A stretch of 64,000 nucleotides of DNA from the IMG/VR virus record IMGVR_UViG_3300045051_000720, positions 62,001 to 126,000 of that record. The stretch is one strand, 5' to 3'. The notes below the pieces were generated by a model. It saw only the letters and a list, made by a program, of their open reading frames with translations. It did no database searches and had not been told where the DNA came from. Made by a program: the position numbers and the translations under genes. Positions 5,709-16,714 of the stretch are shown here, piece after piece. Within the stretch, counting starts at the first letter, position 1. Each line of letters opens with the position of its first letter.

Positions 5709-7100
5709 ATGGCCTTCGGCAATCACTCTCGCCCGCGCGGCACCCGTGTCAACGGGGCTTATGTTCCCAACCCCGGTATCGCGCGGTTGTGGGAGGATTT
5801 CAAGGCATATGCCTCACCCCTCGGGTTTACACCCGATCAATGGCGATTCACCGAGGCGTTCTTCACCGGTCGCAACGTGTGTTTGTTGGGTCGAGCGGGT
5901 ACAGGCAAATCGTATGTGCTCAAGGCGCTGTTCGAGTACCTGACCAAACAGAAAGTGTCGGTGGGACGCACGGCCACGACTGGCGTTTCGGCGTTTGGGA
6001 TAGGTGGTCAAACGATCCATTCGTGGGCGGGGTTGGGTCTTGCGGACGAACATTCCGAGGCTATCATCGCGTCCATCCAGAAGAAGGGCAAGGTCAAGGC
6101 GCGGATTCGCGCGGCGCAGGTGTTGTTCATTGACGAGGTCTCGATGGCCAAGGCCGATCTGATGGACAAGCTGGATGCGGTGTTGCGCTATTACCGTGAC
6201 TCGGGCGATCCTTGGGGCGGCGTGCAAGTCGTTCTCTGCGGGGACTTTTTGCAACTTGCACCAGTCTTCAAGGGTGACGAGACCCAAGCCTTCGCTTTCC
6301 ACTCGGCGGTCTGGGATGAGGGTAACGTGCGTACCATCGTGCTCCAAAAGGTCGTTCGCCAGCAGGGCGATAATACGCTTTTGTCCATTCTCAACGACGT
6401 GCGCGTTGGCAATACCGATTCGCTCCATCTGCTGGACAGCCGGGTGGGCGCGACATGGCCCGACAACGAAATCGAGGCGGTGAGAATCTTCTGCAAGAAC
6501 ATTGATGTCGACGGGTACAACCGCGAACGCATGGCACAGCTCACCAGCGCCGCGAAGACCTACACTGCGCGCGATTCGGGCGAGTCTTTTCACACGGACA
6601 CGTTCAACAAGAACTGCCCCGCGCCGCAGGTGTTGGAGCTGAAGGTGGGGGCGCAGGTGCTCCTTGTTGCCAATCTGGATGTCCAGAGCGGCTTTGTGAA
6701 CGGTAGCGTAGGCATCGTCAAGGCTTTTGGTCCGAACGGGGTGACGGTCAAGTTCACCCAAGGTACGACCGTCGTCGAGCATAACGAGTGGACCATCAAG
6801 GAGCAGGCGGTCGGGATGGATGGCAAGATCATCTATCGCACGGTCGCCACGCGCCGACAGATCCCGCTCAAGGTGTGCTATGCGGTGACTACTCACCGGG
6901 TCCAAGGCATGACGCTGGACCGTGCGATTATTGACATGACGGAGGCCTTCACGACCGGGCAGGTGTACACCAGCCTGAGCCGTGTGCGTGATTTGGAATC
7001 ACTCTCGCTTGCCAGCGCCATTCCCCACTCGGCGATTCGAGTCAATCCCGAGTGCGTGGCGTTCTACGAGGAAGCGGAGCGGGCGGAGAACCCGTTTTAA
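5709..7100 (+). CDS. PIF1-family SF1B DNA helicase
   Basis: GRAGTGKS, IDEVSM, GDFLQLAPV, LKVGAQV, QGMTLD and GQVYTSLSR motifs; start moved to the ATG downstream of the promoter. Confidence 0.93.
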   Translation: MAFGNHSRPRGTRVNGAYVPNPGIARLWEDFKAYASPLGFTPDQWRFTEAFFTGRNVCLLGRAGTGKSYVLKALFEYLTKQKVSVGRTATTGVSAFGIGGQTIHSWAGLGLADEHSEAIIASIQKKGKVKARIRAAQVLFIDEVSMAKADLMDKLDAVLRYYRDSGDPWGGVQVVLCGDFLQLAPVFKGDETQAFAFHSAVWDEGNVRTIVLQKVVRQQGDNTLLSILNDVRVGNTDSLHLLDSRVGATWPDNEIEAVRIFCKNIDVDGYNRERMAQLTSAAKTYTARDSGESFHTDTFNKNCPAPQVLELKVGAQVLLVANLDVQSGFVNGSVGIVKAFGPNGVTVKFTQGTTVVEHNEWTIKEQAVGMDGKIIYRTVATRRQIPLKVCYAVTTHRVQGMTLDRAIIDMTEAFTTGQVYTSLSRVRDLESLSLASAIPHSAIRVNPECVAFYEEAERAENPF

Positions 7101-7829
7101 CGCAGCAGCTCGAAACGCCCCTCCTCCAGCACTATCTCAGGCCGGTGACACTTGGCTCCAGTGCGATGGTCGGTGATGCGACGGTCGATCAGGTTGTAGG
7201 TTCTCACCTTCTCACCCCGCCCGGCTCCGCCGTAGGCCGCGCGGGTTTGCTGTCCCTTAACCCACTGCGCCAGTTTGCCTGCGAGACACTCGCGGGCGAC
7301 GCGGCGGTTTTGCCACTGGTCGCGCCCGTTGATGAAGACCTCAAGGCCGGTTGGGGTGTGGCGTAGACGGACGGCAGAGCAAACCTTGTTCGCGTTTTGC
7401 CCGCCTGCACCCTGTGAGCCGCGCTGGAAGGACTCCGCCAGATCACACTCGCGCATGGTGGTAGACCCTTGAGGCTTGAGCAAGGTCACGGTGACGGCCA
7501 CATAGCTAGTGTGACGCCTGCCACCGCGCTCAGTGTGAGGCACGCGTTGGACGCAGTGACCACCCGTCTCGGCGTCAAACAAATCGATGGCGCGCCGGTC
7601 ATGGATAGTAAAGGACCATTTGGATGGACCCTCCTCGCCCAGTTCGGGCGTTAGCCGATTGCGCGCGGCGTAGGCTAGGTAGGCCGACCAGAGCTGGCCA
7701 GCGAACGCTTTGCTGTCTTCCCCACCCTCGCCGGACTGAACCTCAACGAGAACCCCAACCGCGTCAAAGCGACTCCAGCCGTGCGACGTAGCCGTTAGAC
7801 TGCGGGACCGTGGTGCGGGTTGGGTTCAT
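7097..7829 (-). CDS. Class I peptide chain release factor lacking domain I, predicted +1 programmed frameshift (join 7829-7767, 7765-7097; ~243 aa)
   Basis: GAGGQNANK catalytic motif, QRVPHTE (RF1-type PxT), VEVQSGEGGEDS and RTYN; the 21-codon first ORF ends GGAG-TCG-CTT-TGA-C. Confidence 0.85.
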
Positions 7830-7836
7830 GAGGCGC

Positions 7837-7865
7837 ATCATATACACACGAGGCGAGAACGTCAA
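7837..7865 (-). promoter_or_regulatory. sigma70-type promoter, probably leaderless, for the release factor gene
   Basis: TTGACG-N17-TATGAT, 7 nt before ATG 7829. Confidence 0.65.
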
Positions 7866-7880
7866 GCACAAAAGCTGGCG

Positions 7881-8528
7881 TTATCCCAGAAACGGCTTCC
7901 ACACGGGGTGCTTTGGGTCCTCGCGTAGATGCACGATCGGCGGCACACTCGCCGGAGCCTTCGGGCGCGGGCGCGGTAGACCCGCTTCTTCGGGGGTCTT
8001 GTCGGCCTTCATGGTGTTGATCCGCTTGTCGCAGGTGACGGTATTCTCCCATGTATCGCGACCACCTCGCGAGCGCGGATCGATGTGGTCAACCGACAGT
8101 TCGGCGCGGGTCAGTTTGCGCTTGGTGTAGGCGCAGATGAAGTTGTCGCGGCGGTGCACGTTACCCGTGGACCAGCGCGTGGTGCGCATGGGGATCTTGT
8201 CGAAGTGAGCACAGATGACCACCAGTGGCGCGCGGATGCGGCCCTCGGGATTGTCCGCACTGCGTCCGACGCCAATCCACAGGTCGCCTTCACGCACGGG
8301 CAGCTTAACCCAGTTTTCCCATGCGGTCGGTTGGGCACTGACCAGTACGTGATCGCCATTCTCGTCAACGGCGGTCGTGATGTCGAGCGCGTAGCCCGGG
8401 TGGTCTCCGTCAGACTGGGAGTTGAGAAACACCACCGCGTCTCTCACACTCATCTGATCTACGGGGGACCACGAGCGGTTGAGCTTGAGGACGATGGTCT
8501 TGTCGAGGATGCTGAGGTGATCGGACAT
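7881..8528 (-). CDS. HNH endonuclease (McrA-like)
   Basis: RDNFICAY, SVDHIDPRSRGG..TWENTV.C...N..KADKTPEEAG. Confidence 0.88.
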   Translation of the reverse strand: MSDHLSILDKTIVLKLNRSWSPVDQMSVRDAVVFLNSQSDGDHPGYALDITTAVDENGDHVLVSAQPTAWENWVKLPVREGDLWIGVGRSADNPEGRIRAPLVVICAHFDKIPMRTTRWSTGNVHRRDNFICAYTKRKLTRAELSVDHIDPRSRGGRDTWENTVTCDKRINTMKADKTPEEAGLPRPRPKAPASVPPIVHLREDPKHPVWKPFLG

Positions 8529-8577
8529 GGTGAGTGAGGGGCTAGAGTTAGGGTCTTTGTGTGATCTGATGGGAAAA

Positions 8578-8665
8578 TGGCGGAAGCGAGAGGGCACGAT
8601 CCCCAACGCACGAGTCGTCCTGCGGTGTAGCACACCGTGGCAGTCGCCTGACTGCTTTCGCTTCC
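8578..8665 (-). tRNA. tRNA-Ser(GCT)
   Basis: Cloverleaf, long variable arm, G73-CCA. Confidence 0.8.
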
Positions 8666-8666
8666 G

Positions 8667-8755: not shown

Positions 8756-8842
8756 GGCGGAGTGGTGCCGTACTGCCCGGCTGCCGGTTGCCCGACACAA
8801 CGCTTTCCAAGCGCCGTCCACCTCTAGGTGGCCCAACCCTCC
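8756..8842 (-). tRNA. tRNA-Ser(GGA)
   Basis: GGCGC-TTGGAAA-GCGTT anticodon arm, long variable arm, bulged acceptor stem. Confidence 0.72.
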
Positions 8843-8875
8843 AAAAAGATACAGACCCGAGCGGGGTCTGTAAAG

Positions 8876-8969
8876 TGGCGGTGAGTTGAGATCTTGCGTC
8901 CCAAGGCGGGGTTGGCCCTCCTCCATTCGCTTTCAAGGCGGCGGCAGCGCCTCGGCTGCTTAACTCACC
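8876..8969 (-). tRNA. tRNA-Ser(TGA)
   Basis: CTTGAAA loop, long variable arm, GCCA end. Confidence 0.8.
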
Positions 8970-8973: not shown

Positions 8974-9049
8974 TGGTGCGGACACCCCGAGTTGCACGGG
9001 GACTATCCCTCGTTAGGACCGAGGTTGACTGTCTGTTGCCGATGTCCGC
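8974..9049 (-). tRNA. tRNA-Arg(CCT)
   Basis: CCTCG-GTCCTAA-CGAGG arm, ACCA end. Confidence 0.82.
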
Positions 9050-9537
9050 GAAAAATACTTGTCGCGCTCGACGGTGCGGCGACCCAGCTCTGCGCTGAGG
9101 AAGGCTGTCATCTTGCCGTTGTGACTCATGAGCTTGTCGGCCCACCCCACCATCAGCTGGTTGGGGCACACAAACGGTCCGCGCGCGTTGACGATCAGTT
9201 GGTAGGCATCAGAGTAAGGTATCCTGTGGTGGACCAGCCAGATGAAGGCTGCTGCGCTTGACCGCGATACGCCTGCGAAGCAGTGAAAGAGGATGGACTG
9301 GTCGGGGCTGGTTTGGGCGTAGACACCCAGTAGCCGCCGTATCATCGCCTCTGTGGGAGCGAGAGGGTTGGACGAGTTGCCCGTATCAGCGAACACAAAT
9401 GAGTGGAGAGTGAAGGGGTACTTGAACGCTCGGATGTCGGGGCCGGGTTGGTGGACCTCGTGGAAAGAGATGATGTGGTCCAGCAGAACCGTCGCGAAGG
9501 CAGGAACCTCGGAGACGCCACAAATAGCGAAGGGCAT
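9013..9537 (-). CDS. Cys-dependent (dual-specificity / tyrosine) phosphatase
   Basis: HCFAGVSRS P-loop, FAD acid loop and PN motif; own promoter at 9543-9571. Confidence 0.9.
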   Translation of the reverse strand: MPFAICGVSEVPAFATVLLDHIISFHEVHQPGPDIRAFKYPFTLHSFVFADTGNSSNPLAPTEAMIRRLLGVYAQTSPDQSILFHCFAGVSRSSAAAFIWLVHHRIPYSDAYQLIVNARGPFVCPNQLMVGWADKLMSHNGKMTAFLSAELGRRTVERDKYFSRTSATDSQPRS

Positions 9538-9572
9538 AGCCGATGCTAGTCCGTAATGAGGGCGCTGTCAAG

Positions 9573-9665
9573 TGGCGCGAACGGCAGGATTCTCACCCAC
9601 ATCAGGGCCGAGCGGCCCTTCACCTGCGTTCGAAGCGCAGTTGACGCTATTATGTCGGCGTTCGC
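9573..9665 (-). tRNA. tRNA-Arg(TCG), long variable arm
   Basis: CTGCG-CTTCGAA-CGCAG arm, GCCA end. Confidence 0.8.
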
Positions 9666-9666: not shown

Positions 9667-9755
9667 TGGTCTCGACGGCGAGAGTTGCACTCGCAGATTG
9701 GCTTGCGCCAGACGGTTTAGAGGACCGTTGCCTTGTCTACCCGAGCCCCGTCGAG
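9667..9755 (-). tRNA. tRNA-Arg(TCT), long variable arm
   Basis: ACGGT-CCTCTAA-ACCGT arm, ACCA end. Confidence 0.75.
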
Positions 9756-9760: not shown

Positions 9761-9837
9761 TGGCGCGAGACCGGGGATTCAAACCCCGACTGATCCTCGT
9801 TCGCAACGAGGGCGACTATTCGGTTGCCGAGTCTCGC
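9761..9837 (-). tRNA. tRNA-Arg(GCG)
   Basis: CCTCG-TTGCGAA-CGAGG arm, GCCA end. Confidence 0.82.
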
Positions 9838-9932: not shown

Positions 9933-10007
9933 TGGGGCGCACGACCGGATCTACCCCGGCCCTCCAAGCGTCACAGGCTCGGGTGCTTCTACTACACTAC
10001 GTGCGCC
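9933..10007 (-). tRNA. tRNA-His(GTG)
   Basis: G-1:C73 pair, CTGTGAC loop. Confidence 0.85.
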
Positions 10008-10013: not shown

Positions 10014-10089
10014 TGGAGCTTCAGTAGGGGTTCTCACCCTCCTCTCTCGGATACAAGCCGAGGCCATCGAATGTCTATGGGTCTGAAGC
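10014..10089 (-). tRNA. tRNA-Thr(TGT)
   Basis: CTCGG-CTTGTAT-CCGAG arm, CCA end. Confidence 0.82.
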
Positions 10090-10093: not shown

Positions 10094-10167
10094 TGGAGCC
10101 GAGGACCGGTAACGCTCCGGTGTCTATCGTTTACGAAACGATGGCTCTGCTTTTGAGCTACCAAGGC
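10094..10167 (-). tRNA. tRNA-Thr(CGT)
   Basis: ATCGT-TTCGTAA-ACGAT arm, CCA end. Confidence 0.85.
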
Positions 10168-10171: not shown

Positions 10172-10247
10172 TGGTGGTCCCGGGAGAGCAACGATCCTCC
10201 ACGTCACGCCTATAAAGCGCGCAGTCTGCCGATTAACTTACAGGACC
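10172..10247 (-). tRNA. tRNA-Ile(TAT)
   Basis: CGCGC-TTTATAG-GCGTG arm, ACCA end. Confidence 0.78.
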
Positions 10248-10361
10248 AAAAGGAGGGCATCGGAATCATCTCGGCGCGCAGTGTGCACCTTACGATCCGT
10301 CAGCCCTATAGGTGGTTTGTTTACGAGACGGTGCGTTTAACGACACAGGGCGCAAACGAAA

Positions 10362-10481
10362 TGGTTCCACGGCTCAGGTCGATCAACCCCACCTTTGGCC
10401 AGCCACCTCAGCGAGGTTTGGTAGCTCGTTAGGCCCTTCGCTTCTGACGCCTCCAGTTGGATTGCCCTCAGTGACCGTGAA
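10362..10481 (-). ncRNA. Oversized tRNA-like RNA (120 nt)
   Basis: TTCACGG/CCGTGGA acceptor-like stem plus ACCA; internal arms non-canonical. Confidence 0.45.
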
Positions 10482-10484: not shown

Positions 10485-10570
10485 TGGTGGGCGTGGAGGG
10501 ATGCGAGCCCTCAAGGACAACGGAATTTGAACCCGTCGCTTCTACCAGTTTCGCTTTCGTCCACACGCCC
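10485..10570 (-). tRNA. tRNA-Leu(CAA), atypical architecture
   Basis: ACGGG-TTCAAAT-TCCGT arm; extra GGACG/TGTCC pairing. Confidence 0.8.
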
Positions 10571-10572: not shown

Positions 10573-10655
10573 TCGGCATGGTGGGATTCGGACCCACAGG
10601 GGATAGCGCATTTTAAGTGCGCCGGTTGTCGCCAGTTTCCCTTATCCACATGCCG
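10573..10655 (-). tRNA. tRNA-Leu(TAA), atypical architecture
   Basis: GCGCA-CTTAAAA-TGCGC arm; extra GGATA/TATCC pairing; CCA not encoded. Confidence 0.8.
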
Positions 10656-10661: not shown

Positions 10662-10736
10662 TGGTGGGACCATGGAGCCAACGCACTCCAATCTCCGCGC
10701 TGAGAACGCGGCGAACTACTCTTATTCGATGATCCC
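10662..10736 (-). tRNA. tRNA-Glu(CTC)
   Basis: CCGCG-TTCTCAG-CGCGG arm, ACCA end. Confidence 0.82.
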
Positions 10737-10737: not shown

Positions 10738-10820
10738 TAGGCGTGGAGAGATTCGGACTCTCAAGGACACGTGATCCTAAGTCACGCGGTTCTGCCAATT
10801 TCCCTTCCGTCCACACGCCC
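10738..10820 (-). tRNA. tRNA-Leu(TAG), atypical architecture
   Basis: CGTGA-CTTAGGA-TCACG arm; extra GGACG/TGTCC pairing. Confidence 0.8.
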
Positions 10821-10826: not shown

Positions 10827-10917
10827 TGGTGGCCTCGGGGGGAGTCGGACCCCCACGCTACTATGATTTCGCTCGCGAATCTCATTCGCGCATGTCTACC
10901 AGTTCCATCACGAGGCC
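10827..10917 (-). tRNA. tRNA-Leu(GAG)
   Basis: Class II cloverleaf, ATGAGAT loop, ACCA end. Confidence 0.85.
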
Positions 10918-10994
10918 GAGGTCCCAGTCGGAGTTGCACCGACCCTGTTCGTCATTACCAATGACGCGCCGTGGCTACACTCGGCATTGGGACC
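10918..10994 (-). tRNA. tRNA-Thr(GGT)
   Basis: CGTCA-TTGGTAA-TGACG arm. Confidence 0.82.
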
Positions 10995-11153: not shown

Positions 11154-11161
11154 GTAAAGTA

Positions 11162-11452
11162 TTCAACCGCGTAGCCGCGTTTCTGTTGCCGGGCCATCCC
11201 GACCGACATCCATTTCTCTCACCCACGGTCACCCGTGAACGGGTATCGTTTATAGACACCTGCACCAACCACGCCCTGCTTGACGGCCAGAACTAGCCTC
11301 GGGCTCCATTTGGCTTGCTGGTATCGTGTGGTTATCGCGAGTGTCTACCGACGTAACATCGTCGGGACTGCTCTCCCATCGACTTCTGTCCAGACGCGAA
11401 CTTGACCTCTACGCACGCATCGAGTGCGCGGCAGCGGATGTCTGCGGTTGAA
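11162..11452 (-). ncRNA. rnpB: RNase P RNA (compact, ~290 nt)
   Basis: P1 TTCAACCGC/GCGGTTGAA; P2 GACATCC/GGATGTC; CR-I GAGGTCAAGTTCGCGT pairing with CR-V AACAGAAACGCGGCTA (P4); CAGCAAGCCAAAT; GAGAGAAATG. Confidence 0.85.
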
Positions 11453-11455
11453 AGA

Positions 11456-11530
11456 TGGTGGAGGTACCGAGTGCCGCCCTCGGGCTTGAGTCATGCCATG
11501 ACCCTGTGCTGCTGTTATCACTATACCCCC
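11456..11530 (-). tRNA. tRNA-Ala(GGC)
   Basis: G3:U70 pair, ATGGCAT loop, ACCA end. Confidence 0.87.
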
Positions 11531-11604
11531 GCTGCCTCGGAGCGAATTGCACGCCCACCTAACACCTTCAGAGGGTGTCGGACTAGCTGTTATCCCACGA
11601 GGCA
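11531..11604 (-). tRNA. tRNA-Gln(CTG)
   Basis: U1-A72, ACACC-CTCTGAA-GGTGT arm. Confidence 0.85.
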
Positions 11605-11638: not shown

Positions 11639-11709
11639 GGGTCAGTAGTGTAGTGGTAGCACGTCCGCCTGACTGGCGGGGGGCGCGGGTTCAAATCCCG
11701 TCTGATCCA
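11639..11709 (+). tRNA. tRNA-Val(GAC), inverted relative to the array
   Basis: Canonical GTGT-AGTGGTA-GCAC D arm and GGTTCAAATCC T loop on the + strand. Confidence 0.72.
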
Positions 11710-11715: not shown

Positions 11716-11791
11716 TGGCTGCCCACCACGGATGACAGCCGTGACCCTCGCCTTCAAAGGGCGGTATGCTTGACGTTTACATCAATGGGCA
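11716..11791 (-). tRNA. tRNA-Gln(TTG)
   Basis: CTTTGAA loop, GCCA end. Confidence 0.82.
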
Positions 11792-11798: not shown

Positions 11799-11876
11799 TG
11801 GTCGGCGTGGAGGGATTCGCACCCCCGATCCTTCGCTTCCGGAGCGAGCATGTTGGCTAGGCTACACCACACGCCG
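11799..11876 (-). tRNA. tRNA-Pro(CGG)
   Basis: C1-G72, TCCGGAA loop, ACCA end. Confidence 0.85.
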
Positions 11877-11977: not shown

Positions 11978-12055
11978 TGGTCCTCGCGGCAGGCTTCGCT
12001 CCTGCGGCCTTCTGCATGTCGTGCAGCCGCTCTAACTGGGCTGAGCTACGCGAGG
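11978..12055 (-). tRNA. tRNA-Val(GAC)
   Basis: CTGC-ACGACAT-GCAG arm, ACCA end. Confidence 0.82.
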
Positions 12056-12060: not shown

Positions 12061-12138
12061 TGGTCGGGCCAGTTGGATTCGCACCAACGATCTCATGCTC
12101 CCCGAGCATGCGCGATGACTAGGCTACGCTATGACCCG
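12061..12138 (-). tRNA. tRNA-Pro(GGG)
   Basis: CATGC-TCGGGGA-GCATG arm, ACCA end. Confidence 0.87.
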
Positions 12139-12237: not shown

Positions 12238-12336
12238 TGGCTGTACCGGTAGGAGCCGCCCCTACACCGCCGCAGGTCATGCGTACGGGCTCGCTTAACA
12301 GGCGAGTGCAACGAACGTGCTATTTGCCTCGGTACA
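12238..12336 (-). tRNA. tRNA-Asn(GTT), long variable arm
   Basis: CTCGC-CTGTTAA-GCGAG arm, GCCA end, 99 nt. Confidence 0.78.
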
Positions 12337-12342: not shown

Positions 12343-12418
12343 TGGTCGTCGCTGAGGGACTCGCACCCCCGAACCTCTGCGTGTAGGGCAGGTACCGTAG
12401 CTGCTGGGTCAAGCGACG
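12343..12418 (-). tRNA. tRNA-Val(TAC)
   Basis: CCTACAC loop, ACCA end. Confidence 0.82.
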
Positions 12419-12422: not shown

Positions 12423-12499
12423 TGGCGCGATAGATGGGTGCTGCCCCCACTTGTCTCGGCATAGACAGTGCCGCGAGCATGCTGTTGCTCTTCTACCGC
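12423..12499 (-). tRNA. tRNA-Asp(GTC)
   Basis: CGGCA-CTGTCTA-TGCCG arm, GCCA end. Confidence 0.85.
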
Positions 12500-12580: not shown

Positions 12581-12653
12581 TGGATGCAGGGCCGAGGAAT
12601 CGCACCCGGTCAGGGCGACGGGTATGAACCGCGCTTGGTCTAACCTCCCTGCG
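12581..12653 (-). tRNA. Initiator-like tRNA-fMet(CAT) with reduced D arm
   Basis: C1:A72 mismatch, TTCATAC loop, CCA end. Confidence 0.7.
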
Positions 12654-12812: not shown

Positions 12813-12885
12813 TGGTGGAGCCCCGGGCATCGCAGCCCAACGACAGCCGGATTTTCAGTCCAGCCCGTGCACTCGCACTGACTCC
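12813..12885 (-). tRNA. tRNA-Phe(GAA)
   Basis: CTGGA-CTGAAAA-TCCGG arm, ACCA end; short D arm. Confidence 0.72.
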
Positions 12886-12943
12886 GGAGCCATCGTTAGG
12901 TCCGCCGATGGCGCAGGCGGTCTCGGGTTATTGACGAGGAAGA

Positions 12944-13020
12944 TGGGACGGACGGTGGGTAGCGCGCCCACATGAAGCCGGATTTGGAGTTCGGTGCCTT
13001 ACTTGTCGAGCCACGTCCGT
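12944..13020 (-). tRNA. tRNA-Trp(CCA)
   Basis: CTCCAAA loop, CCA end. Confidence 0.8.
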
Positions 13021-13195
13021 ATGAAAAGGTGGAGCGAAGAGATGGTCATTTATTCACCGGGCTGGGACCAATCCACGAGGTGCCCGATCCAGATGTCTCC
13101 TGCCTCGCTCCGTTTGGAGACCAACGAGTGATGTGGTGTCAGGTTCCTGTAGGCTTCACTGACACCGACCCGCGGCGTGAACCGCGAGGTGAAGA

Positions 13196-13399: not shown

Positions 13400-13491
13400 T
13401 GGTGGACCCGGAGGGAGTTGCACCCCCGACGCCCCGTTAGGGGTCCAGATTTACAGTCTGGTGCAGCCATCTGACAGCTACCTCGTGGTCC
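13400..13491 (-). tRNA. tRNA-Tyr(GTA)
   Basis: CCAGA-CTGTAAA-TCTGG arm, long variable arm, ACCA end. Confidence 0.85.
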
Positions 13492-13497: not shown

Positions 13498-13572
13498 TGG
13501 AGCGTCGTGCGGGACTCCCACCCGCGTGTGTCTGCTTGGAAGGCAGATGCCTTGGTTCTCGGCCAACGACGC
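13498..13572 (-). tRNA. tRNA-Gly(TCC)
   Basis: TCTGC-CTTCCAA-GCAGA arm, TCCA end. Confidence 0.87.
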
Positions 13573-13632: not shown

Positions 13633-13707
13633 TGGTGGAGTCAACGAGATCCGCCCTCGTATGTCACGGATGCAAACCGTGTGCCTTTCTATGTCGGCCA
13701 TGACCCC
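13633..13707 (-). tRNA. tRNA-Ala(TGC)
   Basis: G3:U70, CACGG-TTTGCAT-CCGTG arm. Confidence 0.87.
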
Positions 13708-13709: not shown

Positions 13710-13781
13710 TGGACCCGGCGAGTGCCGCCCTCGCGCCTCCGCGTTGCGAACGCAGCGTGCTACTGTTGTCACCACGAGCCC
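13710..13781 (-). tRNA. tRNA-Ala(CGC)
   Basis: G3:U70, CTGCG-TTCGCAA-CGCGG arm. Confidence 0.85.
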
Positions 13782-13786
13782 GAAAA

Positions 13787-13967
13787 GAGTGACACGATAG
13801 ACTTGTCCGGCAGTCTGGGGAGTCTTGCGGGACTCCTATGGCCTAAACCACGTCTTACGCCGCCTCTTGCCTTAACGCGCGGCCCTTTCCCTTGCGGGTA
13901 CTCAGGGGCTCATCGGCTGTGGATAGAGGACGGACTGTTGGTCCGGGTAGTATCTATCGTGTTGCCC
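13787..13967 (-). ncRNA. 6S-RNA-like rod (~180 nt)
   Basis: Closing stem ACACGATAGAT/GTCTATCGTGT, internal stems, central bubble with 3-prime hairpin GGAGTC-CCGCAA-GACTCC. Confidence 0.45.
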
Positions 13968-14053
13968 CGGTTAGGATCGACTCCGCCGAGGCGAAAAAGG
14001 ATGCCGGACCCCAGCTTTCGCTTGCGGGCGTCCCCTCGCGGGTCCGACGTAAG

Positions 14054-14129
14054 TGGAGGCGCGCCACGGTGCTGCCCCGTGCAAACAGTGTTTTGCAAAC
14101 ACGTCTCGTCGCTGGCTGAGTCGCGCGCC
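14054..14129 (-). tRNA. tRNA-Cys(GCA)
   Basis: TTGCAAA loop, U73-CCA. Confidence 0.85.
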
Positions 14130-14176: not shown

Positions 14177-14252
14177 TGGTGGGTCCATCGGGCATCGATC
14201 CCGCTTCCACGGTTTAAAAGACCGCTGCTAATCCGGCTACAGCTCTGGACCC
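14177..14252 (-). tRNA. tRNA-Lys(TTT)
   Basis: GCGGT-CTTTTAA-ACCGT arm, ACCA end. Confidence 0.85.
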
Positions 14253-14254: not shown

Positions 14255-14326
14255 TGCGGGTAGGGAGACTTGCGCTCCCCTCTCAGCCTTGGCAAAGCCG
14301 TGCGTCGCTATCTACGCTTCACCCGC
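14255..14326 (-). tRNA. tRNA-Gly(GCC)
   Basis: CGGCT-TTGCCAA-GGCTG arm. Confidence 0.82.
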
Positions 14327-14427
14327 GAAAAGTGTCCGATGGGAGAACTGTCAAACCCCCTATGCCCTATGCGCATGGCGTCTCGTTGGTCGGACCCAAC
14401 GGCAGGTATCGATCCTGCGAACATGAC

Positions 14428-14502
14428 GGTGACCGCACCCGGATTCCCACCGGGGTTCTTCGCTGGAAAGGCGAGAGTACTGGGGTGCTATACGATGCGG
14501 CC
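14428..14502 (-). tRNA. tRNA-Glu(TTC)
   Basis: TCGC-CTTTCCA-GCGA arm. Confidence 0.82.
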
Positions 14503-14515: not shown

Positions 14516-15118
14516 CTACGAAGCCGTCCGACCAGTCGCCGGAGTGAGAAATGACGGAACACAAGGACGGTCAGGACGATTATACCGACTCCTTGGACAG
14601 AGAGCACCTAAAGGTAGAGCCGGTGGGGTAATCTTAGGCGCGTTCTCCCTCTTCCGTTTGTGTTCTATTTGACCATGAAAGCGATCAAATCCTAGCATTC
14701 TAGCGGCTGTGATAGCAACGTGATGGTCTTGTGTCTGTCCGAGACGAAAGGAGAGATCGTTGCGATCTTCTAGTCCGAAATCTTTGACGAGCTTATCTTT
14801 TTGGGAGCTGGTCAGATACTGGAAGATAGCCCTTCGATGAATACTTCGAGGCTCTTTCACCGTTGGCTTGTTTCGGGTAGCCCTTTCTGCGCGGTGATGT
14901 GCCTCGTGACAATCCCGACACAGTACCTCCAGATCCTCCATTCGTTCGTTACCACCTACCCGTTCGTAGGTTTTGTGATGGACATCGGTGCCGTGTTCAT
15001 GACATCGATTACAAACGGGACCATAGTAAGCAATCGCCTCAGCCCGCTTGGCCTTCCAGATGGGTGACTGGAGGTATTGACGATGGAGCAATTGATTGTC
15101 GGTAAGATGCTGGGCCAC
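14516..15118 (-). CDS. HNH endonuclease
   Basis: YLQSPIWKAKR...CNRC...VHHKTY...DLEVLCRDCHEAHH. Confidence 0.88.
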   Translation of the reverse strand: MAQHLTDNQLLHRQYLQSPIWKAKRAEAIAYYGPVCNRCHEHGTDVHHKTYERVGGNERMEDLEVLCRDCHEAHHRAERATRNKPTVKEPRSIHRRAIFQYLTSSQKDKLVKDFGLEDRNDLSFRLGQTQDHHVAITAARMLGFDRFHGQIEHKRKRENAPKITPPALPLGALCPRSRYNRPDRPCVPSFLTPATGRTAS

Positions 15119-15132: not shown

Positions 15133-15161
15133 ATGATAGCTCGCTATCCGCCTACTGTCAA
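15133..15161 (-). promoter_or_regulatory. Internal sigma70-type promoter before the HNH gene
   Basis: TTGACA-N17-TATCAT; lacks the spacer YAAC element. Confidence 0.65.
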
Positions 15162-15415: not shown

Positions 15416-15425
15416 TGCTCTAGCT

Positions 15426-15456
15426 AACAAAAAGACCCACCTATCTGGTGGGTCTC
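15426..15456 (-). terminator. Attenuator intrinsic terminator
   Basis: AGACCCACC-AGATA-GGTGGGTCT hairpin followed by TTTTGTT. Confidence 0.88.
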
Positions 15457-15481
15457 GGAAAGGATTAGACTGGATGTCGTC

Positions 15482-15607: not shown

Positions 15608-15637
15608 TGAAGGTGAGAAAAGTGAAGGTTGAGGCGA

Positions 15638-15698
15638 TATACACCCGCACGGTGCGGGTTTATATCGACATCATAGGCGAGTTAGACGCGCTCGTCAA
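15638..15698 (-). promoter_or_regulatory. Tandem promoters for the leader / tRNA unit
   Basis: TTGACG-N17-TATGAT (15698-15670) and ATAAAC-N12-GGTGTATA (15663-15638). Confidence 0.7.
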
Positions 15699-15766
15699 GG
15701 GTTGGTTGCGCTGATCTCGCGTGGGTTGTGTAACACACTGGCGCGGAGCAGGTTGGGTATAAAGAA

Positions 15767-15909
15767 AGGATGGATGGGGTTACGACCCACTGATTGACCG
15801 TTCACGTACCACGTTCGTACGCCGGTTTGTCTTTCGACCGTGTGCGTTCTGATGGTCAGCACACTCGCGTCATCAACCGTAGCGTGTCAGCAATCCACGC
15901 CGCCATCCT
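15767..15909 (-). ncRNA. Expanded tRNA-like RNA B
   Basis: AGGATGG/CCATCCT acceptor stem, GCGTG-GATTGCTGA-CACGC D-like arm, GTGGG-TCGTAAC-CCCAT T-like arm, ~90 nt insert. Confidence 0.55.
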
Positions 15910-16047
15910 AAAGGTCAACTCCCCTTGACGCGCGTGAGTGGCCTGAAGCAAGGTCGGCATTGCGCCCGAGGGTAGCAATCCTAGTCGCGGTACCGTCAGA
16001 GGCGCGCCAGAGGGGGAGTTCAAGGAGGGAGCGACCCACCAAGAGAA

Positions 16048-16170
16048 TGGATAGGTCGGGCGCAACTCCGACTGGTAGGTTTCCCCACGCCGGGCGCGCC
16101 TTTCGGCGGACCACTTGTTGAGGCTTACTCCGCATTACGCTTGCATGTCTGCTTTCCATGCCGCTATCCA
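16048..16170 (-). ncRNA. Expanded tRNA-like RNA A
   Basis: TGGATAG/CTATCCA acceptor stem, GCATG-GAAAGCAGA-CATGC D-like arm, GTCGG...CCGAC T-like arm, ~70 nt insert. Confidence 0.55.
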
Positions 16171-16634
16171 AAAGGATGCCCACCCCTTGCGTTCGCCATC
16201 TTGGGCGACCCAAAGCGTGTCATTCGGGACATGCATCCTAGCTCGTGCTCGACGGGTTGTGATGGTTGTCATGAGACAAGCGCATCGCCGGTAAGGGAGG
16301 ATAGAGCCAGACCACGCGCGACCGCGAGTGATCGTGTATACCTTGAGGGGTGGGCAGAGGGGATGAGAAAGAACAAAAGGGGGCGAGCCGCTGTTATGAG
16401 GTTACGGCTCAGGCGAATGAATGACCACGGCAGCGCAAGGAGGAAAACAGATAAACTCCCTCGCCACAGCGCCTCATTACCCGTCAGTATCCCACGCCAT
16501 CGCGAGACCTGACACTCGGCTTTTACGTGGTACCAAGTCGGGGATGTAACTGACTAGCCTGCTCGGCCGCCACTATTCCCGGCGGGATTGCCCCGCTATG
16601 CACCCGCCGTTGCGGGAAGTGAAAGAACGTATCC

Positions 16635-16714
16635 TATACACCCCATGGTAGGCGTGTTGGATGGCACTGTCAAGAGAGATTGGCGTTGACAGTGGGGTCT
16701 AACCCGACTAGACT
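16635..16714. promoter_or_regulatory. Divergent promoter pair
   Basis: - strand TTGACA-N17-TACCAT (16673-16645) plus GGTGTATA; + strand TTGACA-N17-TAGACT (16686-16714). Confidence 0.75.

What the first reader, a model, noticed from the sequence alone, without database searches (positions are those of the whole stretch)
7097..16673. Self-contained translation-rescue module: tRNAs, RNase P RNA, Y RNA, release factor and phosphatase
SEEN: about 9.5 kb on one strand carries 42 tRNAs (isoacceptors partly grouped: 4 Ser, 4 Arg, 4 Leu), an RNase P RNA, a YrlA-like RNA, a 6S-like RNA, orphan structured RNAs, a Cys-phosphatase and a release factor. It is headed by the all-amino-acid attenuator and ends with the frameshift-gated release factor. 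INFERENCE: the parts act as one inducible system that senses damage to host translation and supplies its own adaptors, 5-prime processing and termination.
Basis: inference. Interest (0 to 1): 0.8.

Follow-up and report, generated by a model that had tools for sequence, protein, structure and literature searches.

The report
Phage translation island with RNase P
A giant-phage genome carries a 9.5-kb block holding a complete, non-redundant set of 42 oddly shaped tRNAs, a miniature RNase P RNA that standard searches miss, a phosphatase and a release factor that needs a programmed frameshift: apparently a kit for keeping protein synthesis going in the infected cell.

Summary
The block is real and lies on the minus strand (16673 to 7097) of a 219-kb uncultured phage contig. 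A lineage-specific covariance model plus manual checks recover 42 tRNA genes (41 anticodons, all 20 amino acids, all 61 codons; 4 Ser, 4 Arg, 4 Leu). A DSP-fold Cys-phosphatase is embedded in the array. At the end sits an RF1-like release factor that lacks domain 1 and needs a prfB-type +1 frameshift (GGAG-UCG-CUU-UGA-C).

The RNase P claim survives although Rfam finds nothing. The 300-nt RNA at 11455-11154 has the strand order, the P4 pseudoknot with its bulged U, J5/15-P15 with the GGU loop, J18/2 and J2/4 of bacterial RNase P RNA. A model built only from the phage copies picks E. coli rnpB as its best foreign hit, and relatives sit in tRNA arrays of at least 45 other viral contigs.

Not supported: YrlA RNA, 6S RNA, the attenuator, and "one inducible operon". 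Five sigma-70-like promoters and two terminators lie inside the block. In relatives the array with phosphatase recurs, while the release factor is often elsewhere.

Also new: most of the tRNAs have a remodelled elbow (G55, no GG in the D-loop).

The parts
16645..16673 (-). Promoter-like site TTGACA-17-TACCAT at the head of the block
   Evidence: A comparable promoter lies in L004 at about 1987.
16288..16375 (-). Short non-coding segment conserved with L004 (74% identity); function unknown
15670..15698 (-). Promoter-like site TTGACG-17-TATGAT, conserved in L004
15482..15607 (-). Candidate 41-codon ORF (MSHLQKSPLP...TTGGLGT). It occupies the stretch that could have been taken for a 6S-like RNA.
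   Evidence: the L004 counterpart keeps the frame, with third-position differences at the C-terminal TGGLG. tblastn is too weak to see the match.
15432..15456 (-). Intrinsic-terminator-like hairpin (10 bp) followed by a T run
15133..15161 (-). Promoter-like site TTGACA-17-TATCAT (11 of 12) ahead of the HNH gene and the tRNA array
14516..15118 (-). HNH endonuclease ORF (200 aa), probably a homing element and not part of the function
   Evidence: PF01844; GC3 0.46; not at this place in relatives
14427..14502 (-). tRNA-Glu(UUC)
   Evidence: R1 44.5 bits
14328..14426 (-). Conserved ~95-nt four-way-junction RNA that follows tRNA-Glu. Two loops carry GGUCCGA and UUGAC. Function unknown.
   Evidence: Homologues in L039 (89%) and L002 (82%). 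24 pairs, 4 of them with compensatory changes. No Rfam family.
14255..14326 (-). tRNA-Gly(GCC)
   Evidence: Rfam 41 bits; R1 46.4
14177..14252 (-). tRNA-Lys(UUU)
   Evidence: R1 42.1
14054..14129 (-). tRNA-Cys(GCA)
   Evidence: R1 31.1; own scan
13782..14053 (-). 272-nt spacer unique to this genome, moderately structured, with several C-GCAA-G loops
   Evidence: z -2.69; no homologue in relatives
13710..13781 (-). tRNA-Ala(CGC)
   Evidence: R1 49.3
13633..13707 (-). tRNA-Ala(UGC)
   Evidence: R1 60.2
13498..13572 (-). tRNA-Gly(UCC)
   Evidence: ARAGORN; R1 71.9
13400..13491 (-). tRNA-Tyr(GUA), long variable arm
   Evidence: ARAGORN -ps90; R1 partial match 30.2 bits
13196..13269 (-). tRNA-Ile(GAU)
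   Evidence: R1 60.2
13021..13195 (-). Conserved 175-nt spacer RNA (83% identical to L037 1693-1844); function unknown
12944..13020 (-). tRNA-Trp(CCA)
   Evidence: R1 39.5
12816..12890 (-). tRNA-Phe(GAA), weak
   Evidence: R1 11.9 bits (E 0.41 over the whole window, 0.04 within the array); ARAGORN -ps80
12581..12653 (-). tRNA-Met-like (CAU) with a C1xA72 mismatch and a reduced D-arm (initiator-like), weak
   Evidence: R1 12.8 bits; 82% conserved in L004
12500..12574 (-). tRNA-Pro(UGG)
   Evidence: R1 55.6
12423..12499 (-). tRNA-Asp(GUC)
   Evidence: R1 35.3
12343..12418 (-). tRNA-Val(UAC)
   Evidence: R1 70.7
12238..12336 (-). tRNA-Asn(GUU) with a long insertion
   Evidence: R1 27.7; own scan
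12061..12138 (-). tRNA-Pro(GGG)
   Evidence: R1 69.1
11978..12055 (-). tRNA-Val(GAC)
   Evidence: R1 69.0
11799..11876 (-). tRNA-Pro(CGG)
   Evidence: R1 68.9
11716..11791 (-). tRNA-Gln(UUG)
   Evidence: R1 37.2
11639..11709 (+). The only canonical-looking tRNA (T-loop UUCAAAU, D-loop GG), on the opposite strand, with anticodon loop CUGACUG. Unique to this genome.
   Evidence: Rfam 60.3 bits; no exact match in the GTDB genome collection
11533..11604 (-). tRNA-Gln(CUG)
   Evidence: R1 56.2
11456..11530 (-). tRNA-Ala(GGC)
   Evidence: R1 49.6
11154..11455 (-). RNase P RNA homologue (~300 nt) with P1, P2, P3, J3/4, P4 pseudoknot with bulged U, P5, J5/15, P15 with the GGU loop, a P18-like hairpin, J18/2 and J2/4. 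The specificity domain is reduced to about 65-70 nt.
   Evidence: five-genome alignment with compensatory pairs; Rfam consensus order; motif chain 32 against null 15.2 +/- 3.2; phage-only model R2 hits E. coli rnpB, 18.4 bits; family in other viral contigs; P4 covariation
11078..11153 (-). tRNA-Lys(CUU)
   Evidence: R1 54.9
11000..11076 (-). tRNA-Met(CAU), elongator-like
   Evidence: R1 68.7
10918..10994 (-). tRNA-Thr(GGU)
   Evidence: R1 49.1
10827..10917 (-). tRNA-Leu(GAG)
   Evidence: R1 35.0
10738..10820 (-). tRNA-Leu(UAG)
   Evidence: R1 20.5 (E 0.0016)
10662..10736 (-). tRNA-Glu(CUC)
   Evidence: R1 47.8
10573..10655 (-). tRNA-Leu(UAA)
   Evidence: R1 20.1 (E 0.0021)
10485..10570 (-). 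tRNA-Leu(CAA)
   Evidence: R1 32.2
10248..10481 (-). 234-nt spacer, partly conserved in L039 and L002; function unknown
10172..10247 (-). tRNA-Ile(UAU)
   Evidence: R1 46.8
10094..10167 (-). tRNA-Thr(CGU)
   Evidence: R1 56.5
10014..10089 (-). tRNA-Thr(UGU)
   Evidence: R1 41.6
9933..10006 (-). tRNA-His(GUG)
   Evidence: R1 56.0
9761..9837 (-). tRNA-Arg(GCG)
   Evidence: R1 53.2
9667..9755 (-). tRNA-Arg(UCU) with a long variable arm and C33
   Evidence: R1 27.9; ARAGORN -ps
9573..9665 (-). tRNA-Arg(UCG) with a long variable arm
   Evidence: R1 18.0 (E 0.008)
9543..9571 (-). Promoter-like site TTGACA-17-TAGCAT; its -10 box ends 6 nt before the phosphatase ATG
9013..9537 (-). Dual-specificity-fold Cys-phosphatase (174 aa; C86, R92 and D51 invariant in the family). 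It is embedded between the Arg tRNAs in all syntenic relatives.
8974..9049 (-). tRNA-Arg(CCU); overlaps the last 36 nt of the phosphatase ORF
   Evidence: R1 53.8
8876..8969 (-). tRNA-Ser(UGA), weak with the type-I model
   Evidence: R1 12.9 (E 0.21 / 0.02); syntenic with Ser(UGA) in L004 and L041
8850..8872 (-). Intrinsic-terminator-like hairpin followed by a T run, inside the Ser group
8756..8846 (-). Degenerate tRNA-Ser(GGA)-like gene; the weakest member of the set
   Evidence: Manual reading of the anticodon arm GGCGC-UUGGAAA-GCGUU; own scan score only 17; syntenic with Ser(GGA) of L041
8667..8755 (-). tRNA-Ser(CGA)
   Evidence: own scan 22.5; R1 7.7 bits; syntenic with L041
8578..8665 (-). 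tRNA-Ser(GCU)
   Evidence: ARAGORN default
7881..8528 (-). HNH_4 endonuclease ORF. Present at the same place in L004, L037 and L039 but absent in L002, so it is a mobile insert.
7837..7865 (-). Promoter-like site TTGACG-17-TATGAT just ahead of the release-factor ORF0
7764..7829 (-). ORF0 of the release-factor gene (MNPTRTTVPQSNGYVARLESL, then stop)
7763..7779 (-). Programmed +1 frameshift site: GGAG, 3-nt spacer UCG, CUU UGA C
7097..7765 (-). Body of the release factor in the +1 frame (222 aa). RF1-like domains 2-4 with PHT and GGQ; no domain 1.

Best explanation
The block is a conserved translation island of an uncultured jumbo-phage lineage. It is not one operon.

Shown:
- A complete, non-redundant decoding set of 42 tRNAs. 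CCA is encoded, spacers are short and U-rich, and most tRNAs have a lineage-specific elbow (G55, no GG in the D-loop).
- A phage-type RNase P RNA inside the array, with the specificity domain largely deleted.
- A catalytically intact DSP-fold Cys-phosphatase embedded between the Arg tRNAs.
- An RF1-like class-I release factor without domain 1, whose synthesis requires a prfB-type +1 frameshift at CUU-UGA-C.

Inferred:
- The tRNAs and the RNase P RNA are made as multi-gene precursors from host-type promoters. The phage RNase P RNA, probably together with the host RnpA protein, cuts the 5' ends of the phage precursors.
- The tRNA set lets the phage translate when host tRNAs are depleted or cleaved, whether by phage-induced shut-off or by tRNA-targeting defences.
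- The release factor is produced only when decoding of UGA is slow. This couples its level to the termination capacity of the infected cell.
- The phosphatase substrate is unknown. My guess is a phosphorylated translation component.
- The HNH genes are selfish inserts.
For: tRNAs. There are 41 anticodons that read all 61 codons under standard wobble, and only CAU occurs twice. The gene order is conserved in L002, L004, L037, L039, L041 and L042. In relatives 147 of 150 tRNAs encode CCA.

RNase P RNA:
- The order of elements equals the Rfam class A consensus.
- P1, P2, P4, P5 and P15 show compensatory changes, and the GGU of L15 is invariant.
- The motif-chain score is 26-33, against a null of 15.2 +/- 3.2 with a maximum of 27.
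- The model R2, built only from phage copies, has as its best foreign hit the 3' half of E. coli rnpB on the right strand and in register: 18.4 bits, against at most 8.4 bits anywhere else in 106 kb.
- 45 further viral contigs carry the J5/15-P15 pattern, and 34 of them are hit by R2. Of the 20 of them scanned with Rfam, most are rich in tRNA genes.
- The P4 helix with its bulged U is fully paired in 20 of 32 phage rows, in at least 9 compensatory versions.

Release factor. The frameshift site is present in frame in 32 of 37 family loci, with a short ORF0 and a G-rich tract upstream.

Phosphatase.

Internal promoters and terminators.
Against: - No transcript data. A single identical 151-nt metatranscriptome contig over 8786-8936 proves nothing.
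- Rfam finds no RNase P family at any threshold. nhmmer of the phage profile against rnpB finds nothing. A model of the 5' half also finds nothing.
- Catalysis is untested. The only viral RNase P-like RNA found in the literature search, from camelpox virus, was inactive in vitro (PMC3001073).
- The factor reads as RF1-type (QRVP-H-T, HTS), yet the shift codon is UGA and about 70% of the phage genes end in UGA. Simple autoregulation does not fit.
- The host is unknown.
- The parts occur separately in some relatives.
Confidence: 0.65

Rival explanations
1. The whole block is one inducible unit with an attenuator at its head. It senses damage to host translation and also supplies a Y RNA and a 6S RNA.
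For: All parts lie on one strand, and the order is conserved in the closest relatives. In L002 and L004 the release-factor ORF0 follows the preceding gene without a promoter of its own. The frameshift site could act as a sensor.
Against: Five sigma-70-like promoters and two strong terminators lie inside the block. The head region is neither structured beyond chance nor conserved. There is no Y RNA or 6S match and no Ro gene among the window ORFs scanned. The presumed 6S stretch holds a conserved small ORF. The parts are separable in relatives.
Confidence: 0.1
2. Codon-usage compensation only. The tRNAs merely top up codons that the phage uses and the host reads poorly, and the other genes are neighbours by chance.
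For: This is the classical explanation for phage tRNAs, discussed in PMC10264068.
Against: The set is complete and non-redundant (one gene per anticodon, all 61 codons) rather than a biased subset. It travels with a processing RNA and a phosphatase at a fixed position in at least seven genomes. The host, and therefore its codon usage, is unknown, so this was not tested directly.
Confidence: 0.15
3. The 300-nt RNA is not a working RNase P ribozyme. It is a decoy or regulator derived from one, for example a sponge for the host RnpA protein, or some other structured RNA that happens to resemble the RNase P core.
For: The specificity domain is mostly missing in this genome. There is no Rfam hit. 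The camelpox RNase P-like RNA was inactive.
Against: Every element of the catalytic domain that contacts the substrate or metal ions is kept and covaries: P4 with the bulged U, J5/15, the GGU that pairs with the 3' CCA, J18/2 and J2/4. Nearly all tRNAs beside it encode CCA. RNase P RNAs that lack the specificity domain yet are active are known in Pyrobaculum (own knowledge).
Confidence: 0.2
4. The release factor is a ribosome-rescue factor in the manner of PrfH or ArfB, or a factor that reads all three stop codons, rather than an ordinary RF1.
For: Domain 1 is absent, as in PrfH. Across the family the shift-site stop is UGA in 26 loci, UAG in 5 and UAA in 1, while the recognition loop stays PxT or PxN. 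That spread fits neither an RF1-only nor an RF2-only logic. Bacterial prfB never uses UAG at this site (PMC12421855).
Against: The protein scores far better against RF1 than against PrfH or ArfB (149 against 45 and 35 bits). It keeps the RF1 codon-reading residues. No RtcB partner lies next to it.
Confidence: 0.3

Closest known systems
Bacterial RNase P RNA, class A (Rfam RF00010; E. coli rnpB / M1 RNA)
   Same: The order is the same: P1, P2, P3, J3/4, P4 5' strand, P5, then J5/15, P15 with the GGU loop, a P18-like hairpin, J18/2, P2 3' strand, J2/4, P4 3' strand and P1 3' strand. P4 is a pseudoknot with a bulged U. Motifs match: GAGG..AAGU, GCAAGCCAAA, GGGUU/UGGUU, GAGAAAUG, AACAGAA.
   Different: Only about 300 nt long. 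Roughly 65-70 nt lie between the P5 strands, against about 165 nt in E. coli. It scores below every Rfam RNase P threshold. It is encoded by a phage, inside a tRNA array, without a promoter of its own.
Minimal RNase P RNAs that lack the specificity domain (type T of Pyrobaculum, Rfam RF02357; named from own knowledge)
   Same: The catalytic domain is kept and the specificity domain is lost or shrunk.
   Different: No Rfam type T hit was reported. The phage family spans sizes from near full length to tiny: the distance from CR-I to J5/15 is 62-186 nt.
prfB (RF2) programmed +1 frameshift
   Same: A short ORF0, a Shine-Dalgarno-like GGAG 3 nt before CUU, an in-frame UGA followed by C, and the body in the +1 frame (PMC12421855).
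   Different: The protein is RF1-like and lacks domain 1. The shift codon comes about 21 codons into ORF0 and leads straight into domain 2. Family members use UGA, UAG or UAA.
PrfH (RF-H) and ArfB rescue factors
   Same: Small GGQ release-factor relatives without the N-terminal domain. PrfH keeps a codon-recognition-like domain (PMC6514570).
   Different: Weak HMM scores (45 and 35 bits). The RF1 reading motifs are retained. There is no RtcB neighbour and no C-terminal ArfB tail.
tRNA-rich translation gene sets of huge phages (PMC7162821; XacN1 with 56 tRNAs, PMC5852040) and the T4 tRNA cluster with its two stable RNAs of unknown function (own knowledge)
   Same: Large one-strand tRNA arrays covering all 20 amino acids, accompanied by translation factors and by non-tRNA stable RNAs.
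   Different: Here the set is non-redundant, the elbow is remodelled in most members, and one of the accompanying RNAs can be identified as an RNase P RNA.
Phage tRNAs as counter-defence against tRNA-cleaving systems (PMC10264068, PMC11464382, PMC11555353)
   Same: Phage tRNAs deviate from host-type tRNAs at positions that nucleases read. Seven tRNAs here have C33 in place of the near-universal U33.
   Different: The main deviation here is at the elbow (position 55 and the D-loop), and it affects most of the set. No defence system or host is known for this phage.

Membership tests
RNase P RNA (bacterial type) | Long-range P4 helix with a bulged U, flanked by J3/4 (GAGGAAAG-like) and J2/4 (ACAGAA) | tested here: met
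   Window: AG(U)UCGCGU pairs with ACGCGGCU, preceded by GAGGUCAAG and AACAGAA. Compensatory versions occur in L039 and L041. Across the wider family 20 rows pair 8/8 and 3 rows 7/8, in at least 9 sequence versions.
RNase P RNA (bacterial type) | Strand order P2 5', P3, P4 5' ... P2 3', J2/4, P4 3', P1 3' | tested here: met
   Rfam CS line for RF00010 compared with alignment A9. P1 and P2 are supported by compensatory changes.
RNase P RNA (bacterial type) | J5/15-P15 with the GGU loop that pairs with the 3' RCCA of the substrate | tested here: met
   GCAAGCCAAA ... (U/G)GGUU-GGU. The GGU is invariant in five genomes. P15 covaries: GCC/GGU, CCC/GGG, CGC/GCG. R2 aligns this region to E. coli GCAAGGCCAAAU ... 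CGGGUAGGC.
RNase P RNA (bacterial type) | Specificity domain (P7-P14, CR-II and CR-III) | tested here: not met
   Only about 65-70 nt lie between the P5 strands in the window copy. The distance from CR-I to J5/15 is 62-186 nt in the family and 185 nt in E. coli.
RNase P RNA (bacterial type) | Score at or above the Rfam gathering threshold | tested here: not met
   No RNase P family hit at E<=1 over 12 kb, at E<=10 over 361 nt, or at gathering score in 20 related loci.
RNase P RNA (bacterial type) | Statistical similarity to a bona fide rnpB | tested here: met
   The phage-only model R2 scores 18.4 bits on E. coli rnpB 319-452(-). E is 8e-5 in 42 kb and 8e-4 in 404 kb. Background is at most 8.4 bits. 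The 5'-half model R3 and nhmmer found nothing.
RNase P RNA (bacterial type) | Cleaves pre-tRNA 5' leaders | not testable with these tools
   Needs an in vitro cleavage assay or complementation.
prfB-type programmed +1 frameshift | CUU-UGA-C shift site with a Shine-Dalgarno-like element 3 nt upstream, a short ORF0 and the body in +1 | tested here: met
   GGAG-UCG-CUU-UGA-C at 7779-7763. The site is conserved in L002, L004, L037, L038 and L039, and in frame in 32 of 37 family loci.
prfB-type programmed +1 frameshift | The gene encodes RF2 (SPF motif), so the UGA is autoregulatory | tested here: not met
   prfA models score 149/139 bits against 109 for prfB. The motifs are QRVPHT and HTS. PDB RF1 scores 108 bits against 71 for RF2.
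RF1 (prfA) | GGQ and PxT motifs | tested here: met
   GGQ is invariant. The tripeptide is PHT here and PxT or PxN across the family.
RF1 (prfA) | Full four-domain architecture and the NCBIfam equivalog cut-off | tested here: not met
   The alignment starts at RF1 residue about 88-111, so domain 1 is absent. Score 149 bits against a cut-off of 400.
PrfH | TIGR03072 cut-off and an RtcB neighbour | tested here: not met
   45 bits against a cut-off of 167. No RtcB among the neighbours.
Y RNA / YrlA | An Rfam Y RNA model match and a Ro (TROVE) partner gene | tested here: not met
   No hit at E<=10 on 14310-14445. No TROVE domain among 38 window ORFs scanned. The rest of the 219-kb genome was not available. 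GGUCCGA and UUGAC occur in two loops of the 95-nt RNA, which is a lead only.
6S RNA | An Rfam 6S model match, or a long hairpin with a central bubble | tested here: not met
   No hit. The promoter-to-terminator unit 15698-15432 holds a conserved 41-codon ORF.
Leader-peptide attenuator | A leader ORF plus alternative terminator and antiterminator hairpins, conserved in relatives | tested here: not met
   z -0.77. There is no distinctive leader ORF. The region is missing in L004, where the promoter abuts the conserved segment.
Dual-specificity (Cys) phosphatase | The HCxxGxxR(S/T) P-loop, a general-acid Asp and the DSP fold | tested here: met
   HCFAGVSRS. C86, R92 and D51 are invariant in 36 sequences. 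pLDDT 93.8; the best PDB matches are DUSP8, DUSP10, DUSP19 and PTPMT1, with TM about 0.5-0.58. The Pfam DSPc score is 25.2, below the cut-off of 33.5.
tRNA | A cloverleaf with a 7-nt anticodon loop and a 3' CCA | tested here: met
   36 minus-strand hits at E<0.01 with R1, plus 6 weaker ones. The canonical elbow (U55, G18G19) is not met in most: about 30 of 40 have G55.

The most novel reading that the evidence does not exclude
Jumbo phages carry their own, so far unrecognised class of RNase P ribozyme inside their tRNA arrays. In this lineage it has lost most of the domain that reads the tRNA elbow. That loss freed, or followed, a concerted remodelling of the elbow (U55 to G55, loss of G18G19) in about 40 tRNAs. 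The result is a partly orthogonal tRNA supply and processing system that host tRNA-targeting factors may not recognise. It is topped by an RF1-like factor whose synthesis is switched on by slow stop-codon decoding.
Probability: 0.3. Interest if true: 0.92.

Novelty: new variant of a known kind. Interest (0 to 1): 0.85.

Why it matters
RNase P RNA is regarded as a cellular housekeeping ribozyme. A phage-borne family that Rfam does not detect would add a ribozyme to the list of translation parts that viruses carry. It lies in tRNA arrays of dozens of viral contigs.

It would also explain part of the unannotated space in phage tRNA clusters. It would supply natural minimal variants for studying how RNase P recognises its substrates.

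The remodelled elbow across most of a tRNA set offers a natural experiment on which cellular factors need the canonical G18-U55 contact. These include RNase P, modification enzymes, the ribosome and tRNA-cleaving defences.

The release-factor family shows that the prfB frameshift device has been transferred to an RF1-like protein and works with UGA, UAG or UAA. This makes the logic of release-factor autoregulation testable in a new setting.

Tried and rejected
- Rfam at gathering score and at permissive thresholds gave no RNase P, Y RNA, 6S, tmRNA, T-box or group I intron match. This covered the whole window, 6000-18000, 15000-16760, 11120-11480 and 14310-14445.
- Searching for the E. coli CR-I and CR-V strings with up to 3 mismatches found nothing in the block. 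The window copy has an inserted base and differs in the helix.
- I first took the 272-nt spacer 14053-13782 for the RNase P candidate. It is not conserved in relatives.
- I first rejected the RNase P reading of the 300-nt RNA because I misremembered the order of the P2 and P4 3' strands. The Rfam structure line corrected this.
- nhmmer of the phage profile against rnpB and a model of the 5' half gave no hit.
- ARAGORN tmRNA mode found none.
- A relaxed cloverleaf scan of the spacers gave only noise-level candidates.
- Expression data: the DNA runs are the probable source sample and one other rhizosphere sample. One RNA run holds a single 151-nt identical contig. This is not usable for co-transcription.
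- Host identification through the canonical plus-strand tRNA found no exact match in GTDB genomes.
- I suspected a split or intron-containing release-factor gene in L037 and L039. It is a gene-calling artefact, because tblastn aligns all 222 residues without a break.
- GenBank phages: no nucleotide match. The release-factor family appears only in one 595-kb uncultured phage. The phosphatase has no match at all.

Full report
WHAT THE WINDOW IS

The window is about 60% G+C. It has no near match among GenBank phages. It is identical to part of IMGVR_UViG_3300045051_000720, a 219-kb viral contig, and the holding runs are rhizosphere metagenomes. Its larger ORFs are typical of a large phage:
- ribonucleotide reductase, a UvsX-like recombinase and a PIF1 helicase
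- an SbcD-like nuclease
- many sugar-modifying enzymes
- several homing endonucleases in low-GC islands

The finding lies on the minus strand and is read from 16673 down to 7097. It is bounded by plus-strand genes on both sides: a D12 methyltransferase starting at 16721 and the PIF1 helicase ending at 7100.

tRNAs

Standard tools see only a fraction of the tRNAs: ARAGORN 14, Rfam 9 at gathering score and 17 at E<=1.

Lowering the ARAGORN threshold adds hits on the minus strand of 8500-14600 much faster than elsewhere. A simple cloverleaf scan of my own did the same.

I then built a covariance model (R1) from 36 confident tRNAs of this genome and two relatives. I ran it without filters over the whole window.
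- 37 hits reach E<0.01, all between 9573 and 14502. Of these, 36 are on the minus strand.
- Four more minus-strand hits inside the array score E 0.16-0.41: Ser GCU, Ser UGA, a Met-like CAU and Phe GAA.
- The first hit outside the array comes at E 1.4.

The 4 Ser, 4 Arg and 4 Leu are partly grouped.

The set has 41 different anticodons, with only CAU twice. Under ordinary wobble it reads all 61 sense codons. It is therefore a complete, non-redundant decoding set, not a biased supplement.

THE tRNAs ARE UNUSUAL

Alignment to the model shows three features.
- About 30 of 40 have G where the near-universal U55 should be. Their T-loops read UGCGAAU or GGCAGCA.
- Most D-loops lack the GG pair.
- Seven have C33.

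In 150 tRNAs from six related genomes, 96 have G55 and 90 of those lack a D-loop GG. Of the 51 with U55, 39 keep GG (Fisher 1e-18). This is not phylogenetically independent, because all 30 tRNAs scored from L041 are canonical. CCA is encoded in 147 of the 150.

The only tRNA in the window with a canonical elbow is the one on the plus strand (11639-11709). It is unique to this genome and has an odd anticodon loop. It has no exact match in GTDB genomes.

CONSERVATION OF THE BLOCK

The release factor and the phosphatase each define a metagenome-only family. Fetching their contigs gave the following contexts.
- L002, L004, L037 and L039 hold the same one-strand array of at least 40 tRNAs, in the same order. 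The phosphatase sits between Arg(UCG) and Arg(CCU). Then come the Ser tRNAs, usually an HNH gene, the release factor and a convergent PIF1 helicase.
- L041 (a circular 184.7-kb genome) and L042 keep the array and the embedded phosphatase, but have no release factor within 10 kb.
- L040 has the phosphatase among replication genes, with no tRNAs nearby.
- L038 (release factor 73% identical) has the factor beside a DNA ligase, with only two tRNAs.
- L005-L011 and L030 (62-64% identical) have the factor among tail genes, with no tRNA within 10 kb.

The array with its phosphatase is therefore the stable core. The release factor is an add-on of one subclade.

RELEASE FACTOR

From an ATG at 7829 a 21-codon ORF0 ends with CUU UGA at 7769-7764. 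The +1 frame, starting at GAC 7765, runs 222 codons to 7097.

A GGAG lies 3 nt before CUU and a C follows UGA. This is the geometry of the prfB site (PMC12421855).

The protein reads as RF1-like.
- NCBIfam prfA models score 149 and 139 bits against 109 for prfB.
- Solved RF1 scores 108 bits against 71 for RF2 and 39 for PrfH.
- It has QRVP-H-T, HTS and GGQ.
- The alignments start at RF1 residue about 88-111, so domain 1 is missing.

Among 37 loci of the family, 32 have an in-frame CUU-stop directly before the body. Each has a short ORF0 and a G-rich tract upstream. The stop is UGA in 26 loci, UAG in 5 and UAA in 1. Five loci start directly, without a shift site.

According to PMC12421855, bacterial prfB never uses UAG at this site, prfA has no programmed frameshift, and the device is absent from Actinomycetota. 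Together with the consensus sigma-70 promoters, this argues for a non-actinobacterial host.

About 70% of the phage genes in the window end in UGA. An RF1-type factor gated by UGA is therefore not classically autoregulated. Either host RF2 activity sets its level, or its specificity is broader than its motifs suggest.

RNase P RNA

Rfam reports no RNase P family at any threshold I could use. The E. coli CR-I and CR-V strings are not found within 3 mismatches.

Comparison of the spacers with relatives showed that several are conserved. The 300-nt spacer after tRNA-Ala(GGC), at 11455-11154, has counterparts at the same array position in L037, L004, L039 and L041.

The five sequences share:
- a terminal helix and a second helix, both with compensatory changes, followed by a hairpin
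- the block GAGG..AAG(U)UCGCGU
- a 4-bp helix that covaries as CUGG/CCAG, CUCC/GGAG, CAGA/UCUG and CCGC/GCGG
- the block GCAAGCCAAA
- a 3-bp helix that covaries as GCC/GGU, CCC/GGG and CGC/GCG, next to an invariant GGU
- GAGAAAUG, then the 3' strand of the second helix
- AACAGAA followed by a strand that pairs with the first block around a bulged U. Compensatory versions occur in L039 (CCCGGC/GCCGGG) and L041 (AA(U)UCGUC/GGCGAUU).

I fetched E. coli rnpB and printed the Rfam class A consensus with its structure line. The order is exactly that of RNase P RNA: P1, P2, P3, J3/4, P4 5' strand, P5, [specificity domain], P5 3' strand, J5/15, P15 with L15 (GGU), P18, J18/2, P2 3' strand, J2/4, P4 3' strand, P1 3' strand.

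Three tests followed.
1. A chained score of five consensus motifs, taken in order, gives 32, 33, 30, 31 and 26 for the five phage RNAs and 62 for E. coli. For 1477 random 305-nt windows of this window the mean is 15.2, the sd 3.2 and the maximum 27.
2. A covariance model (R2) was built only from the 3' halves of the five phage RNAs, with an automatically derived structure. It was searched without filters over 42 kb that included the 1-kb E. coli locus. The top hit is the 3' 134 nt of rnpB, on the right strand and aligned end to end in the homologous register (18.4 bits, E 8e-5). Nothing else in that search or in the 64-kb window exceeds 8.4 bits.
3. The pattern GCAAGCCAAA-N(28-58)-GGTTGGTGCA occurs in 45 other IMG/VR contigs. 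My rough estimate of the chance expectation, from an assumed collection size, is a few matches.
   - R2 hits 34 of them at E<0.01, mostly over the full model.
   - Rfam shows no RNase P family in 20 of these loci, yet most of the 20 are rich in tRNA genes and several are packed with them.
   - Many of these copies resemble the bacterial consensus more closely than the window copy does (UAGAUGAAUG ... ACAGAACCCCGGCUA; GAGGAAGUUCGGGGC).
   - The P4 helix with its bulged U is fully paired in 20 rows and 7/8 in 3 of 32 phage rows, in at least nine compensatory versions.
   - The distance from CR-I to J5/15 ranges from 62 to 186 nt, against 185 nt in E. coli. The specificity domain therefore varies from near full size to almost none. 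In the window copy it is small.

Negative results: nhmmer and a model of the 5' half do not connect the phage RNAs to rnpB.

In the paper library I found no phage-encoded RNase P RNA. A review mentions an inactive RNase P-like RNA of camelpox virus (PMC3001073). A megaphage study notes that Rfam detects only tRNAs and a tmRNA in such genomes (PMC8172020).

I conclude that the element is a homologue of the RNase P RNA catalytic domain (about 0.85). Catalytic activity is untested.

OTHER RNAs

The 95-nt element after tRNA-Glu (14426-14328) is conserved in L039 and L002. It folds into a four-way junction with four compensatory pairs. Two of its loops carry GGUCCGA and UUGAC, which recalls the two halves of the Ro-binding stem of Y RNAs (own knowledge). 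No Rfam family matches it and no Ro gene was seen among the ORFs scanned. The YrlA reading remains a lead only.

The unit 15698-15432 runs from a promoter to a terminator and contains a 41-codon ORF. Its L004 counterpart keeps the reading frame, with synonymous differences. I read it as a small protein gene rather than a 6S RNA.

The head region 16640-15700 is not significantly structured (z -0.77 and -1.81) and is mostly not conserved.

PHOSPHATASE

It is 174 aa long with the motif HCFAGVSRS. The family is tight: 63 proteins, all at least 48% identical, all from metagenomes, and none in GenBank phages. C86, R92 and D51 are invariant.

The AlphaFold2 model is confident (pLDDT 93.8). It matches dual-specificity protein phosphatases at TM about 0.5-0.58, with no closer match to RNA phosphatases among the top 50 listed. 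The substrate cannot be inferred.

Its fixed place between the Arg tRNAs, and its own promoter ending 6 nt before the ATG, suggest that it is made from a leaderless or nearly leaderless message.

TRANSCRIPTION

A consensus scan finds 11 sigma-70-like sites, against 3.2 expected. The five best minus-strand sites stand at the head of each unit: 16673, 15698, 15161, 9571 and 7865. Two strong terminator-like hairpins lie at 15456-15432 and 8872-8850.

In L002 and L004 the release-factor ORF0 follows the preceding gene without such a promoter. The wiring therefore differs between relatives. No usable RNA data exist.

VERDICT

The YrlA RNA, the 6S RNA and the attenuator are unsupported. The 'single inducible damage-sensing unit' is an inference that the promoter and terminator pattern and the modular distribution speak against.

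The most likely function is to make phage translation independent of the host's tRNA pool, its tRNA 5' processing and, in part, its termination. The +1 frameshift is the only built-in sensing step.

Noticed in passing
window 8578-14502 (- strand); L002, L004, L037, L039, L042 against L041: Most of the tRNA set has a remodelled elbow: G in place of U55, together with loss of the D-loop GG. In the related circular genome L041 all 30 scored tRNAs are canonical. The change therefore looks concerted within one subclade.
   Followed up: partly
window: seven tRNAs (Val UAC, Val GAC, Pro GGG, Pro CGG, Met 11000-11076, Ile GAU, Arg UCU): C33 replaces the near-universal U33 in the anticodon loop. In relatives 17 of 131 tRNAs show the same.
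   Followed up: partly
window 11639-11709 (+), with a hairpin at 11620-11645: A single canonical tRNA-like gene lies on the opposite strand in the middle of the array. Its anticodon loop is CUGACUG (U37). On the minus strand its 5' flank forms a hairpin followed by a T run. It is absent from relatives.
   Followed up: partly
L006-L036 (release-factor family loci): The stop codon at the frameshift site varies across the family: UGA in most, UAG in L018, L022, L027, L033 and L035, UAA in L023, and no shift site in L013, L024, L026, L031 and L032. L018 and L013 also carry a tRNA with a CUA anticodon.
   Followed up: partly
L052 1003-1462: A GOLLD RNA (Rfam 191 bits) lies in the same phage tRNA array as an RNase P-like RNA (L052 5565-5707).
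   Followed up: no
L044-L089: The RNase P-like RNA family occurs on viral contigs whose matched stretches have 42-69% G+C and whose lengths run from 4 to 532 kb. Among the 20 loci scanned with Rfam it often lies directly next to tRNA genes. The size of the specificity-domain region varies about three-fold.
   Followed up: partly
window 15482-15607 (-): A candidate 41-aa protein gene with its own promoter and terminator lies at the head of the array and is conserved in L004.
   Followed up: partly
window 9543-9537 and 7837-7829: The -10 boxes of the predicted promoters end only 6-8 nt before the start codons of the phosphatase and of the release-factor ORF0. This implies leaderless or near-leaderless messages.
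   Followed up: no
window 918-1847, 26512-27297, 44111-46082, 54230-55420, 58017-58997: Low-GC islands coincide with homing-endonuclease or HTH genes (LAGLIDADG, HNH-AP2, endonuclease VII/HNH, GIY-YIG/HNH). The ribonucleotide reductase genes at 49550-53037 are also low in GC (0.44-0.45).
   Followed up: no
L041 12603-19804; L042 11681-13507: In relatives the array is followed by a metallophosphatase, an RlaP-family protein and an RNA ligase (L041), or by a TnpB-like gene (L042). This hints at RNA repair functions next to the array.
   Followed up: no
window 8786-8936: A wastewater metatranscriptome run holds one 151-nt contig identical to this stretch (Ser tRNAs and terminator). Contaminating DNA cannot be excluded.
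   Followed up: no
NCBI assembly GCA_040384425.1 (L002, L004, L037): Three different but related jumbo-phage contigs (170, 94 and 180 kb), each with this island, are filed in one assembly.
   Followed up: no
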